Shown: one piece after another, positions 56,838-62,704 of the stretch
Position numbering within the stretch: the first letter of the stretch is position 1
Layout: each line of letters begins with the position of its first letter
Assembly: GCA_020184695.1 (NCBI GenBank)
Contig: JAANOX010000275.1
Coordinates: 124,001-188,000, forward strand
From: Histomonas meleagridis 2922-C6/04-290x
Lineage: Eukaryota > Protista > Parabasalia
Direction: 5' to 3'
Length of the DNA stretch: 64,000 nucleotides
Made by a program: the position numbers and the translations under genes
The notes under the pieces: model-generated
Database searches by the model: none
What the model was told of the DNA's origin: nothing
Seen by the model: the letters and a program-made list of their open reading frames with translations, nothing else

Positions 56838-56959
56838 ACAATAAAATTTTTGCGATTTTTAAATTGAATTGAATTTTGTGAACGAAATTATTTTTTTTAA
56901 TTTTTTCATTTTGAAAAGTGGCTTGATAAGATTTTCGATTTTTTAGCAAAAGTCTCTTC

Positions 56960-58207
56960 CTAATTCAAATTATTTATTAAATTTTTTAATCTTTCTTCTA
57001 TAAGTTTTTTTTCGTCGAATCTTAATATACAGAACCATCGACCTTTACATTGTACAGGACGACTGTTTTGCAAACATTTGGAAATATTTCCACATTGATG
57101 ACCAAATTTGCAAATCATATCGTATAGAACTTTATCTTCTCCTTCTGACCAAGGACAGTATGTTCTCATGTTAGATAGAATTTTTTTAAATTCCTATTCT
57201 AAACCTAAAAACCTTGAAATTGAACCTCCATTCATTTCAAGACAAAGCCGTGAACGGTCTCCAAAACCCAAACAAAGATTGTTAATTAATGAAATGTCCA
57301 AATTGTCCCATGTTTGTTCCAAGATCAATTTCAACTCTTCCAGATCTTTTGGGGACCTCTTGTAAATTATTTGCTTCATTATAGCCCAGAGCAACTCGAT
57401 TGGGTTTAGGTCAGGCGAGTTGGCCGGCCAATCATTTATTACATCGACACGATCCTCAAGCCACTCCATAGATTGTACTGAAGTATGGCACCGAGCCCCA
57501 TCCTGAACATAAATCCAATCAAGCTTACCATGGGTTTTGTTCATATCCTCAATAAAATTGGAAGCTTCCATGTTTTGTATATATTGTCCTGAGTCAATTG
57601 ATTTATCTACAATTACTAATTTGCTCTTGTACCCAAAAGATATCACACCATAGATCATTACAGATTTTGAAAATTTGGCCTTTTTTATTATTGTTTCTTC
57701 GACATACTCGCCTTTTCTCATTCACATCCATTCATTATCTTTTCCCAAGACAAATCGCGATTCATCAGAGAAAGCGATCTTGTCAAGATATGATTTTTGT
57801 GTGAGTATTTTTTTTACAAATTCGATTCTTGCTTCTATTTGTTGATGCGTTAAATCTTGTTCTACCTTACAAGGTCTATAACGAAATTTCATTTCGTTTC
57901 TGACCTTTGTAACAGATTGATGGGAAATCGATAAATGAAAACATTCTTCAATTTTATCCGCTAATTCTTTTGAAGATAATGTTGGTTCAAGAAGGGTCTT
58001 TAATTCTATAAATTCTCTAATTTTATTTGTAATAACAACTGATCTTCCTCTTATTGTTGCATCAGGTACTTGACCAGTATTGGTGTATGCTTTAATTGTA
58101 CTGCTTATCCTGTTAGTACCTACATGAAGGGTATTTGCTATTGTTTGATAGTTGTGCCCTAATTTGTACATTTCTATTATTGACTGTTCTTTGTTCCACG
58201 AGGTCAT
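56960..58207 (-). mobile_element. Tc1/IS630-family (DD34E) transposase pseudogene fused in frame to a C-terminal Myb domain (copy 1)
   Basis: Three track ORFs share one frame, split by TGA (57722-57724) and TAG (57194-57196): HTH, FSDESRF, VQDGARCH, WPANSPDLNPIE (34 aa between D and E), then Myb WSEGEDKVL...QCKGRW. Confidence 0.85.
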
Positions 58208-58308
58208 CTGATTTAAATTAATAAACGGTGTTCATTGAAAAAATTCAATATGTTCTCTCAAGCTCGAATTATTTGTACCAGTTTAGAAATTAAACATTTT
58301 CTCTGCAA

Positions 58309-60492: not shown

Positions 60493-61000
60493 ATAATTTC
60501 AGTCTTTCAATAAATTTTTTTTAAATAACTGTTTTATACTGAAGTAACGATCAAATTATATAAAAAAAACATCGTGTTAGAGATATTACATTGAAGTTAT
60601 GCTACATCTGTATCAGTGAAATTATGATATTAAAATATGAAGATGTATAGATTCAAAATGATAGACGTTTTGAAAATAACAAAAATAAAAGTTGATCGTA
60701 ATGGTACTGACAATTTATAAGAGTGACAAAATTTTCTCGAGTTTTGATTGGATCATATAGATAAACTGGAAATCAAAATTGGTAAGTGGATTGCATTCAT
60801 TTCTACGGTTTATTAACTTTTTTATAGCATCATCGCTTTTAGTTTATTTCAAATATATTTGTAAAGCATTCAATTTACTTTCCAATTTTGAATCAAGGAA
60901 CAATTGTTCAATTAAGTCAGCTCAAGAAGTGTCCAATTGCCAAAAACAGAACTCGGATCGAAGGGGAGTTGATCAATGCTTGGGAGAGAAACAACAGATC

Positions 61001-62143
61001 TCAATCTATCATGTTTTTCCTTTGACTGAGATTTTGAAATCGATTTTTAACATCTGTTTTGTCTCTTCCTAGGCGTTCCCCAATCAGTTTCCATTTGTTT
61101 CCGAACTCTGCTTGAAGATTGATCAAATTCACATCTTCATCGATTTTCCACATTTTACCTTCATTTATAGCCACTTTGTTTTTTACCTCATTAATGTGGC
61201 TGGTAAGGTACTGCAAAGCACTTCCTCCTCCAAGATCCCTGACAAGTTCACATCTCCTGATGAAATCGGCTATGAGAGCGTCCATAAACTTGCTATCAAT
61301 GGAAAACCAAATTCTATTCAGCACAGAATAAATCGAATCACCTTATCTCCATTCATATTTTTTGATTTTTCTTTTCATGATCGCCCAAATATTTTCGATA
61401 GAAATAAGGTCGGGCGAGTTTGGTGGCCAGCCAGGAACCACAATTGCTTTATCAGATAGCCACTTTATTGTTTGTGATGCATTATGGCAAGGAGCGCCAT
61501 CTTGCATAAAACACCACTTAAATTGACCATATTTCATGACACATGTCTGAATTACTTTGCTATATTTTATAATTCTTTGTTATTCTCCTGCATCAACGAA
61601 ACCTGAGCATCTCATCAATGGCGACCGATAACCAATCCCAATTGCTCCCCAAACCATAGCTCCAGGATTGAAATTGGTTTTTTCAGCAAAATATGTATCA
61701 TTCCGATGGCCGCGCTTTATCCTTCTCCAGCAATTGTTGGGCCCTCTTTCAAATCTGCATTCATCAGCAAAAACTATATTGCTGACTTGGGATTGGTTAT
61801 CAAGTACTTATTGACAAAACTCTAATCGCATATGTTTTTGTACTTCTGTGACTTCTTGCTTGATATATGGCGACCTGTAAATAAAACCCTGCTTTCTTCT
61901 TGCTCTAACAATTGTGGACTTTGAGATACTTGTTGCATATATTTTATTTACAGCTGAGGCAATGTCTCCATCTGTAAGCCTAGCATTAGCATAAGAAAGC
62001 ATCTCAATATAATCTGACATCGATTCAGTTAAACAAGGAGGTCGTCCAACTCTGTGATTCATTTTCACTCTCTTCTTTATTGCAGAAATCCTCCTGGAGC
62101 TGATGTTCAGGATTGTAATCTTATGATTGTTTTTCTGGTTAAC
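61001..62143 (-). mobile_element. Tc1/IS630-family (DD34E) transposase pseudogene fused in frame to a C-terminal Myb domain (copy 2, divergent family)
   Basis: Manual translation gives one frame with TAA at 61808-10, 61580-82 and 61343-45: GRPP HTH, IVFADECRF, AMVWGAIG, MQDGAPCH, WPPNSPDLISIE (DD34E), transposase tail IWFSID..GGGS, then Myb WKIDEDVNL..FGNKWKLIGERLGR..VKNRF. Confidence 0.85.
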
Positions 62144-62248
62144 TTATTTTTTTTTTTTTTAGACTCAGCACATAGTGACGATAACAAAGTTTGTTCACTC
62201 AATGGGCAATCTATTTTTTTCTTTTTTTCTTTTTCTTTAATCCAAGGT

Positions 62249-62385
62249 ACCCCCTCCCCCAAAAGAAGCCCTAATGGCGAATGAGTGCATTTATCACGAG
62301 CTGGCCGTAGCCCGACCTCGCGGAGCCCTTTTTTATATAAGGGCGGAGACAGGTGATCAGTATAAAGTGTACTAGGGGAGGGGGT
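62249..62385. other. GC-rich nested inverted-repeat island downstream of Rep (candidate origin or element terminus)
   Basis: Outer 11-bp IR accccctcccc (62249-59)/ggggagggggt (62375-85); inner hairpin gccctt-ttttatat-aagggc (62325-62344); CTAG at 62372-75. Confidence 0.6.
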
Positions 62386-62704
62386 TAGGCACTTTTTTTA
62401 ATTTGATTTTTGCCCGTTATTTGAGAACGTTAAAAATAAAAATTTTAGGCTCAGGACCCATATTTCGAAAAACGTTAACTGGTACCTCCTTTCAAGATCA
62501 TGTTACCCTGACCTAAATATGAATTTTCGTCCCAATTTAATGAAAAACGGACACCAGATTTGAATACTTTATTTGCAAATTCAATTCATTTTGATCGTCT
62601 TTCGACCGATAGGATTTTTGTCCCATTCATATATTTGTGTCACTTTTGCTGTCAATTTTGGTACCTTCAATAAAATTTAAGGATAAAATTGTCAAATGAA
62701 TTGT

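What the first reader, a model, noticed from the sequence alone, without database searches (positions are those of the whole stretch)
61001..62143. Second, independently diverged Tc1-Myb fusion confirms the architecture (copy 2)
Seen: 381 codons in one frame with three TAA stops and no frameshift. The transposase tail (IWFSID..RCELVRDLGGGS) runs without interruption into an R3-like Myb repeat within ORF 61001-61324. The sequence is clearly divergent from copy 1 yet has the same DD34E spacing and domain order. Inference: the fusion is an ancestral family trait, not a chance juxtaposition.
Basis: partly seen in the sequence, partly recalled or inferred. Interest (0 to 1): 0.75.

Follow-up and report, generated by a model that had tools for sequence, protein, structure and literature searches.

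The report
Dead Tc1 transposon with Myb tail
This is a broken, front-truncated copy of a jumping gene in the poultry parasite Histomonas meleagridis whose cut-and-paste enzyme ends in an extra Myb-type DNA-reading domain, and that extra domain is a built-in feature of a large, apparently undescribed branch of the Tc1 transposon family.

Summary
Observation confirmed. Window 61001-62143, minus strand, is one frame of 381 codons with three in-frame TAA stops. It holds an HTH_Tnp_Tc3_2 remnant and a DD34E DDE_3 core. An R3-type Myb repeat lies in the same stop-free ORF as the transposase tail.

- Intact single ORFs with DDE_3 plus Myb exist in other Histomonas meleagridis copies and in many 400-465-aa metagenome proteins; 68 of 87 full-length ones pass Pfam Myb.
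- Where a motif search found it, the Myb nearly always starts 85-96 residues after the conserved NSPDL motif that holds the catalytic E.
- On a tree of the transposase core alone, all Myb-bearing proteins form one clade (99/98). Copies 1 and 2 sit in separate subclades, and a Myb-less Histomonas Tc1 is sister.
- Myb-only trees are too short to prove a single capture but do not reject it (AU p 0.39).

Copy 2 is dead: 148 bp of its 5' end are missing and only the 3' inverted repeat remains. Myb-bearing elements end in TA|AAC...; the Myb-less sister ends in canonical TA|CAGTG.

I found no paper describing this architecture. The scan had already noted this family on other DNA of this genome (s1-326064, s1-356796). 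What the Myb does is untested.

The parts
60762..60763 (.). TA dinucleotide flanking the 3' terminus (target-site duplication half)
   Evidence: The sibling C261 copy and relatives L014, L034 and L158/L023 have TA on both sides of their termini.
60764..60789 (-). 3' terminal inverted repeat. Read from outside it is AACTGGAAATCAAAATTGG...
   Evidence: Matches the 5' TIR of the sibling deletion copy on C261 over the first 16 bases. The same terminus occurs in L014.
60863..60891 (-). Inner inverted copy of the TIR binding-site sequence. It pairs with 60773-60801.
   Evidence: the repeat finder I1: 29 nt, 79% complementary. The same arrangement, with compensating base changes, occurs in L014 at 1929-1953/2025-2049.
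61001..61003 (-). Terminal stop codon (TGA) of the transposase-Myb frame
61028..61153 (-). R3-type Myb repeat (W-x18-W-x17-F), C-terminal domain of the transposase
   Evidence: Pfam Myb_DNA-binding, E 1.8e-9, 38 bits. The homologous domain of P0021 matches c-Myb R3 and T. vaginalis Myb R3 structures. The transposon-Myb HMM scores host R3 repeats highest.
61154..61342 (-). Last helices of the catalytic domain plus the linker to the Myb, in the same frame with no stop before the Myb
   Evidence: Aligned with intact relatives.
61343..61345 (-). In-frame stop 3 (TAA)
   Evidence: Relatives have an arginine here.
61346..61579 (-). C-terminal half of the DDE_3 catalytic core, with the second D (61499-61501) and the E (61394-61396); DD34E spacing
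   Evidence: Pfam DDE_3, E 9e-10. Residues checked.
61580..61582 (-). In-frame stop 2 (TAA)
   Evidence: Relatives have a tyrosine here.
61583..61807 (-). N-terminal half of the catalytic core, with the first D (61763-61765)
   Evidence: 52-57% identical to P0021/P0022. Residue checked.
61808..61810 (-). In-frame stop 1 (TAA)
   Evidence: The sibling on C261 has TGG (Trp) at this codon.
61811..62113 (-). Second helix-turn-helix (HTH_Tnp_Tc3_2) and the remnant of the first HTH
   Evidence: Pfam, E 4e-6, below cut-off. Aligns with residues 27-127 of P0021 at 46% identity.
62114..62114 (-). 5' truncation point. 148 bp are missing, comprising the 5' TIR and about 24 codons.
   Evidence: Similarity to the C261 sibling stops here while the sibling runs on to its own 5' TIR. 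The missing piece is not found elsewhere in the genome.

Best explanation
Window 60764-62114 (minus strand) is a dead, 5'-truncated copy of a Tc1-like DD34E cut-and-paste transposon, about 1.5 kb when complete. Its genome matches the published Histomonas meleagridis assembly.

The transposase has an N-terminal paired-type double helix-turn-helix, an RNase-H-fold DDE core, and a single R3-type Myb repeat in the same polypeptide. The Myb starts about 90 residues after the catalytic E motif. It was acquired once, before the split of the two clades represented by copy 1 and copy 2, and has been kept in active elements since.

Shown here:
- the domain order;
- the single-ORF fusion in intact relatives;
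- one clade of Myb-bearing transposases;
- TIRs and TA duplications;
- decay of this copy by three point-mutation stops and loss of 148 bp at the 5' end.

Inferred: the element moves like Tc1 or Sleeping Beauty, with the HTH domains binding the inverted repeats and the DDE core cutting and joining. The Myb would be a third DNA-reading module. It is basic and keeps the Lys-Asn of the recognition helix. It either helps recognise the element's own ends, which begin TA|AAC in every Myb-bearing subfamily examined but TA|CAGTG in the Myb-less sister, or steers the choice of target DNA.
For: Domains and frame:
- Pfam domains and frame of copy 2.

Fusion in intact proteins:
- Intact fused ORFs in the same genome.
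- 87 full-length relatives: 87 with DDE_3, 68 with Myb.
- Near-constant position of the Myb where a motif search found it.

Single origin:
- Core-only ML tree puts all long-tail proteins in one clade (99/98), with copies 1 and 2 in separate subclades (100/98 and 98/96) and the Myb-less L040 as sister.

Fold and domain type:
- The catalytic part matches Sleeping Beauty 5cr4 (E 6.5e-20) and Mos1 by fold.
- The Myb matches c-Myb R3 and T. vaginalis Myb R3 and scores host R3 repeats at 42-64 bits (most above 50), above R2 in all but three of the host proteins.
- AF2 model of P0021: pLDDT 91.2, with three Myb helices at 352-402 and block pLDDT of 96-98 over residues 351-400.
- Median pI of the Myb is 9.3; for copy 2 it is 9.7.

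Transposon behaviour:
- TIRs and TA flanks in siblings and relatives, and a 713-bp internal-deletion derivative on C261.
- About 18 Myb-bearing loci among roughly 100 Tc1-like matches in the genome, all with stops or frameshifts.
- Termini are AAC(T/C)(T/G)G in Myb-bearing subfamilies and CAGTG in the Myb-less sister.
Against: - No fully intact copy exists in this assembly, so activity in Histomonas today is not shown.
- The Myb-only tree does not itself recover one transposon-Myb clade, and one small group of transposon Mybs sits with host R3 repeats at 97 SH-aLRT in a quick tree.
- DNA binding by the Myb, and its site, are untested.
- The link between termini and Myb rests on one Myb-less subfamily against four or five Myb-bearing ones.
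- Copy 2's own HTH match is below Pfam's cut-off.
Confidence: 0.85

Rival explanations
1. Independent captures: the copy 1 clade and the copy 2 clade each picked up a host Myb repeat separately, and the shared architecture is convergent.
For: The host has a very large Myb family to draw from (at least 150 matches, 544 candidates). Over the Myb alone, copy 2 is 37-45% identical to several host repeats. It is 22-30% identical to clade-A copies over the whole tail plus Myb. In the Myb-only tree clade-A Mybs are not joined to clade B.
Against: Every full-length member of the clade has the long tail, so the common ancestor of both subclades had it by parsimony. The Myb begins at the same distance from the catalytic E motif in both clades, after a homologous linker. 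Holding all transposon Mybs in one clade costs only 3.6 lnL units (AU p 0.388).
Confidence: 0.07
2. The element encodes two proteins, as PIF/Harbinger does: a transposase and a separate Myb protein. The single frame in copy 2 would then be accidental, or the result of read-through.
For: Copy 1 has a stop exactly between the tail and the Myb. Harbinger elements need a separate Myb-like protein (PMC9710019).
Against: Siblings of copy 1 have Lys or Ala at that codon and read straight through (L036, L034). Copy 2 and 87 intact relatives carry tail and Myb in one ORF with no start codon or spacer between them.
Confidence: 0.03
3. The fused proteins are domesticated host transcription factors derived from a transposase, not transposon genes.
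For: Transposase-derived DNA-binding proteins are common in eukaryotes, and many metagenome ORFs are intact.
Against: In Histomonas the copies lie between TIRs with TA flanks, occur at many unrelated sites, are mostly decayed, and include an internal-deletion derivative. The DDE triad is conserved across the family: the alignment has invariant D143 and E266 and nearly invariant D231. Clusters have several near-identical members on short contigs, as repeats do.
Confidence: 0.03

Closest known systems
Tc1 family of the Tc1/mariner (IS630-Tc1-mariner) superfamily, e.g. Tc1, Tc3, Sleeping Beauty (DD34E)
   Same: Paired-type N-terminal HTHs, a DDE_3 core with DD34E spacing, TIRs of about 25-45 bp, TA target duplication and a size near 1.5 kb. 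The catalytic domain matches the SB100X structure 5cr4 (E 6.5e-20), and the fold matches the Mos1 transpososome.
   Different: It carries an extra C-terminal R3-type Myb repeat of about 50 residues after a linker, giving proteins of 400-465 aa instead of about 340. The termini begin AAC(T/C)(T/G)G instead of the canonical CAGTG, which the Myb-less sister element in the same genome keeps. Copy 2's 3' end carries a second, inverted copy of the TIR site.
PIF/Harbinger transposons with their Myb-like ORF1 protein
   Same: A Myb/SANT-type DNA-binding module works alongside a DDE transposase. In Harbinger3_DR it binds a 9-bp subterminal motif and is needed for nuclear localisation of the transposase (as summarised in PMC9710019 and PMC3158080).
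   Different: In Harbinger the Myb is a separate protein and the transposase belongs to another superfamily. Here the Myb is covalently fused to a Tc1-type transposase and is a canonical R3-type repeat, not a trihelix/MADF type.
Parabasalid R2R3 / R1R2R3 Myb transcription factors (e.g. T. vaginalis Myb1/Myb2/Myb3; PDB 3osf, 2k9n, 3zqc)
   Same: The transposon domain is most like their last (R3) repeat: three helices, spaced tryptophans and the KN(R/H)W recognition helix.
   Different: The transposon has one repeat only, attached to a transposase. In clade B the third aromatic is Phe and the second spacer is one residue shorter.
Host fusions of Tc1/mariner/pogo transposases (SETMAR, CENP-B, and POGK-type genes)
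   Same: A Tc1/mariner-type transposase in one polypeptide with another chromatin or DNA-binding module.
   Different: Those are single-copy domesticated host genes. This one is carried inside mobile elements with TIRs and many decayed copies.

Membership tests
Tc1/mariner superfamily, Tc1-like DD34E | DDE catalytic triad with 34 residues between the second D and the E | tested here: met
   D 61763-65, D 61499-501, E 61394-96, with the E 35 positions after the second D. Pfam DDE_3 scores 39 bits against a 28.6-bit cut-off.
Tc1/mariner superfamily, Tc1-like DD34E | N-terminal bipartite (paired-like) helix-turn-helix DNA-binding region | tested here: inconclusive
   In copy 2 the second HTH scores 27.4 bits, below the 31.5-bit cut-off, and most of the first HTH is deleted. 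In intact relatives HTH_Tnp_Tc3_2 is found in 51 of 87, and the AF2 model shows two three-helix bundles at residues 4-39 and 56-100.
Tc1/mariner superfamily, Tc1-like DD34E | Terminal inverted repeats | tested here: met
   Copy 2 keeps only the 3' TIR. The C261 sibling has both, and L014, L033, L034, L036 and L158/L023 have both.
Tc1/mariner superfamily, Tc1-like DD34E | TA target-site duplication | tested here: met
   TA lies on both sides in C261, L014, L034 and L158/L023, and at the one surviving end of copy 2 and of copy 1.
Tc1/mariner superfamily, Tc1-like DD34E | RNase-H-like catalytic fold resembling solved Tc1/mariner transposases | tested here: met
   phmmer to 5cr4 gives E 6.5e-20. 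Foldseek to Mos1 (4u7b, 5hoo, 3hos) and to SB gives E 1e-11 to 4e-10. Tested on the intact relative P0021, not on copy 2 itself.
Tc1/mariner superfamily, Tc1-like DD34E | Canonical CAGTG termini (typical of Tc1-like elements, not strictly defining) | tested here: not met
   Termini read TA|AACTGG (copy 2, C261, copy 1), TA|AACTTG and TA|AACCGG in other Myb-bearing subfamilies. The Myb-less L040/L039 has TA|CAGTG.
Myb DNA-binding repeat, R3 type | Pfam Myb_DNA-binding match above the curated cut-off | tested here: met
   38 bits against 24.4 bits for copy 2. 68 of 87 relatives match at E<=0.001.
Myb DNA-binding repeat, R3 type | Three regularly spaced aromatic residues and a three-helix fold | tested here: met
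   Copy 2 has W-x18-W-x17-F and clade A has W-x18-W-x18-W. The AF2 model of P0021 has helices at 352-365, 369-376 and 380-402, with block pLDDT of 96-98 over residues 351-400.
Myb DNA-binding repeat, R3 type | Closer to R3 than to R1 or R2 | tested here: met
   The best PDB matches fall on the R3 part of c-Myb (1h88_C 107-155, 1gv2 53-101, 1idy) and of T. vaginalis Mybs. The transposon-Myb HMM scores the last (R3) repeat of host proteins at 42-64 bits, most above 50. R2 scores 15-51 bits, mostly 27-46, and R1 8-40 bits. R3 scores highest in all but three of the host proteins.
Myb DNA-binding repeat, R3 type | Sequence-specific DNA binding | not testable with these tools
   Indirect evidence only: basic pI (median 9.3) and retention of the Lys-Asn pair of the recognition helix. 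The role of those residues is from my knowledge of c-Myb.
PIF/Harbinger two-protein transposon | PIF-type transposase plus a separate Myb-like ORF | tested here: not met
   The transposase is DDE_3/Tc1-type, and the Myb is in the same ORF.

The most novel reading that the evidence does not exclude
The C-terminal Myb makes this a naturally 'addressed' Tc1 transposase. On this reading it reads a specific DNA word. That word is either the AAC-containing termini that replaced the canonical CAGTG ends when the Myb was gained, or Myb-type promoter elements in the host. The second option would bias insertion next to genes; copy 1's end lies 24 bp upstream of a start codon. The C-terminal slot would then be modular, since one relative carries an HMG box there.
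Probability: 0.25. Interest if true: 0.7.

Novelty: new variant of a known kind. Interest (0 to 1): 0.5.

Why it matters
Tc1/mariner transposases are the textbook minimal design: two HTHs plus a DDE core. They are also the basis of gene-transfer tools such as Sleeping Beauty. A large, old and diverse natural clade that has kept a third sequence-reading domain fused to the C-terminus shows that this end tolerates a DNA-binding module and can benefit from one. It also offers a natural model for how a transposase gains extra end recognition or target selection.

For parabasalid genomics there is a practical point. Some genes annotated as Myb-like or as 'Tc3 transposase' fragments are pieces of these elements. 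The published Histomonas repeat annotation (RepeatMasker with a Trichomonas library, PMC8529796) is unlikely to have captured them.

This particular locus is a dead copy with no function of its own.

Tried and rejected
- Genetic-code reassignment as the reason for three TAA stops: rejected. The neighbouring gene ends in TAA, long ORFs are intact, and the sibling has TGG at stop 1.
- The missing 5' end displaced by the neighbouring insertion: rejected. The sibling's 157-bp 5' end matches nothing else in the genome.
- TIRs flanking copy 2 in the window: none found, because the 5' end is gone.
- The listing of cluster members gave no accessions for them.
- The one metagenome-contig scan used generic NSPDL/NPIE patterns and returned only ordinary Tc1/IS630 relatives whose matches end at about residue 325. 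It was useless for the Myb question.
- The ESM Atlas returned only ordinary Tc1 clusters at 0.86-0.87 and no DDE_3+Myb cluster. That search covers only clusters of 50 or more members.
- The Myb-only phylogeny was too short to resolve.
- Eight literature searches and four papers checked found no description of a Tc1/mariner transposase with a C-terminal Myb (searches; papers). Subscription journals and Repbase Reports are not covered.
- The large HMMER representative search was not run, because the claim does not rest on absence of relatives.

Full report
THE OBSERVATION. On the minus strand, window 61001-62143 translates as 381 codons in one frame. There are three internal stops, all TAA, at 61808-10, 61580-82 and 61343-45. 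The frame ends in TGA at 61001-03. TAA is an ordinary stop here: the adjacent adaptin gene ends in TAA, and ORFs of up to 2240 aa are uninterrupted.

Pfam on the four stop-free pieces gives three matches. HTH_Tnp_Tc3_2 scores E 4e-6, which is below its cut-off. DDE_3 scores E 9e-10, above its cut-off. Myb_DNA-binding scores E 1.8e-9, at 38 bits against a 24.4-bit cut-off. The last ORF (61001-61324) holds the end of the transposase and the Myb with no stop between them. The triad is D 61763-65, D 61499-501 and E 61394-96, which is DD34E.

Copy 1 (56960-58207, minus strand) has the same order and two stops. It is 24-44% identical to copy 2 over the three transposase pieces; the tail-plus-Myb piece gives no significant match (21%, E 9.4).

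WHAT THE LOCUS IS. The genome is Histomonas meleagridis. An ORF from the same assembly is 100% identical to NCBI protein KAH0785246.1, 'transposable element tc3 transposase [Histomonas meleagridis]'. The assembly size of 43,133,364 bp agrees with the size given for one of the two assemblies in PMC8529796, as far as the excerpt shows it.

A DNA search of the genome found a sibling of copy 2 on contig C261, 91-93% identical. It is a 713-bp internal-deletion derivative that keeps both ends. Comparing the two copies fixes the 3' terminus of copy 2 at window 60764 (...CCAGTT), followed by TA. It also shows that copy 2 stops being transposon at 62114, whereas the sibling runs on for 148 bp through about 24 more codons to a 5' inverted repeat (AACTGGAAATCAAAA...) preceded by TA. 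Protein homology to intact relatives begins at the same point, at residue 11 of the frame.

The missing 5' piece is nowhere else in the genome. Just upstream, a many-copy repeat ends at 62129. Earlier notes of the scan assign that region to an endogenous kirkovirus-like copy.

Copy 2 is therefore a 1351-bp remnant (60764-62114) of an element of about 1.5 kb, inactivated by 5' truncation and three point-mutation stops. At stop 1 the sibling has TGG. At stops 2 and 3 relatives have Tyr and Arg.

IS THE FUSION REAL AND ANCESTRAL? Searching the genome with the DDE piece and with the tail-plus-Myb piece shows the two lying colinear at many loci. Three of these have uninterrupted ORFs that run from the catalytic core through the tail into the Myb: L034:1144-2046, L026:1447-2142 and L036:1564-2070. 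Pfam finds both DDE_3 and Myb_DNA-binding in each single ORF. The stop between tail and Myb in copy 1 is Lys or Ala in its siblings.

Outside this genome, the word search returned 107 relatives of a clade-A ORF, and 278 relatives of P0021 at E<=1e-5, of which the best 120 were listed. Most listed proteins of 400-465 aa carry PF13358 plus PF00249. Of 87 full-length ones scanned afresh, 87 have DDE_3 and 68 have Myb_DNA-binding at E<=0.001.

Copy 2's nearest relative is P0021 (438 aa), at 46-60% identity over all four pieces including the Myb.

Ordinary Tc1/IS630 proteins end about 70 residues after the start of the NSPDLNPIE motif. In this family the tail is 137-200 residues. A strict motif search found the Myb in 51 of 117 full-length proteins, and in 47 of those 51 its first Trp lies 85-96 residues after the motif, in both clades.

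A careful ML tree of the transposase core with the linker and Myb removed puts all 22 long-tail proteins in one clade, supported at 99/98. Two clearly truncated proteins fall in the same clade. Copy 1 falls in a 14-member subclade (100/98) and copy 2 in a 7-member subclade (98/96). The Myb-less 338-aa H. meleagridis Tc1 (L040) is sister (100/98) (quick tree). By parsimony the common ancestor of both copies already carried the Myb.

The host has at least 150 Myb matches. An HMM of the transposon Mybs scores the last (R3) repeat of host proteins at 42-64 bits, most above 50. R2 scores mostly 27-46 bits and R1 8-40 bits, and R3 scores highest in all but three of the host proteins, so 'R3-like' is right. 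This agrees with the PDB matches to c-Myb R3 and to T. vaginalis Myb R3.

In a tree of the roughly 55 Myb columns, clade-B Mybs form one clade (99 SH-aLRT) and copy 2 sits inside it. Clade-A Mybs lie in an unresolved bush with host R3 repeats. Forcing all transposon Mybs together costs 3.6 log-likelihood units (AU p 0.388). The Myb alone neither proves nor rejects one capture. The core tree and the fixed position of the domain carry the argument.

HOW IT MOST LIKELY WORKS. Shown: the catalytic part is Tc1-type. It matches Sleeping Beauty 5cr4 at E 6.5e-20 and matches Mos1 transpososome chains by fold. An AF2 model of P0021 is confident (pLDDT 91.2, pTM 0.77). It shows two N-terminal helical bundles, the RNase-H core and a three-helix Myb at 352-402, with block pLDDT of 96-98 over residues 351-400. 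Elements have TIRs of about 25-45 bp and TA flanks.

Inferred: cut-and-paste transposition as in Tc1 or Sleeping Beauty, with the Myb as a third DNA-reading module. It is basic (median pI 9.3; copy 2 9.7). It keeps the Lys-Asn of the recognition helix across proteins only about 30% identical. The role of those residues is from my knowledge of c-Myb. Such conservation in a mobile element implies selection for transposition.

One new correlate: every Myb-bearing subfamily whose ends I could define begins TA|AAC(T/C)(T/G)G. These are the copy 1 group, C279/C99, C26/C156, and copy 2/C261 and L014. The ends of the C233/C215 pair, read by eye, look similar. The Myb-less sister keeps the canonical TA|CAGTG. 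AAC is the core read by Myb R3 (my knowledge). With one Myb-less subfamily as the only contrast, this is a lead and not a result.

The closest functional analogue is the separate Myb-like protein of PIF/Harbinger. It binds a subterminal 9-bp motif and escorts the transposase into the nucleus (PMC9710019, PMC3158080).

KNOWN OR NEW. Eight full-text searches and four papers read found no Tc1/mariner transposase with a C-terminal Myb (searches; papers). The Histomonas genome paper annotated repeats only with RepeatMasker and a Trichomonas library. The proteins themselves are in public databases under generic names. Repbase and subscription journals were not searchable. I therefore rate this a new variant of a known kind, not categorically new.

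The scan had already met this family on other pieces of this genome, and two follow-up agents reached the same reading (s1-326064, s1-356796). I treat that as agreement, not as independent evidence.

LIMITS. No copy in this assembly is fully intact. No named Trichomonas or Tritrichomonas protein appeared among the listed hits, but the word search is not exhaustive. The neighbouring virus-like region was only observed, not analysed or reconstructed.

Noticed in passing
window 62129-62446: A repeat present in at least 35 places in the genome at 74-94% identity ends 15 bp from the truncation point of copy 2. Earlier notes assign this region to an endogenous kirkovirus-like copy. Its arrival, or an associated deletion, probably removed the 5' end of the transposon.
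   Followed up: partly
window 58285 (copy 1, 56931-58285, minus strand): Copy 1 keeps its 5' terminus (TA|AACTGGTAC...) only 24 bp upstream of the ATG of the beta-adaptin-like gene (58309), in divergent orientation. Its 3' end is truncated at 56931. The two Tc1-Myb remnants flank this one gene.
   Followed up: partly
L002 (G000:C261:22409-23142): A 713-bp internal-deletion derivative of the copy 2 subfamily keeps both TIRs and TA flanks. Its 5' 466 bp are joined directly to the last roughly 250 bp. It looks like a MITE-type non-autonomous copy.
   Followed up: partly
window 60773-60801 / 60863-60891; L014:1929-1953 / 2025-2049: The 3' end of clade-B elements carries a second, inverted copy of the TIR site about 60-70 bp inside the terminus. 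Both arms have changed together between copy 2 and L014, so it is a conserved feature. It could be an extra transposase-binding site or a hairpin.
   Followed up: partly
L040:787-1984 and L039 (G000:C265, C206): The Myb-less sister Tc1 of the same genome is a compact element of about 1.2 kb with 33-bp TIRs and canonical TA|CAGTG termini. L040 encodes an uninterrupted 338-aa ORF.
   Followed up: partly
protein P0223 (metagenome, 464 aa): A relative of the clade (37% identical to P0021) has an HMG box (E 1.2e-11) at residues 385-434, downstream of the DDE core. This may be another DNA-binding domain in the C-terminal slot, or a gene-calling fusion on a 2-kb contig.
   Followed up: no
L014:540-581: About 25 bp upstream of the 5' TIR of this clade-B copy lies an inverted stretch (TTTTCCCAGTTT) that looks like a solitary 3' terminus of the same kind of element. 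If so, two ends abut.
   Followed up: no
whole genome G000: The host Myb family is very large: 150 scored matches to PF00249, all at E below 2e-13, out of 544 candidates. Most are R2R3 or R1R2R3 proteins of 170-360 aa.
   Followed up: no
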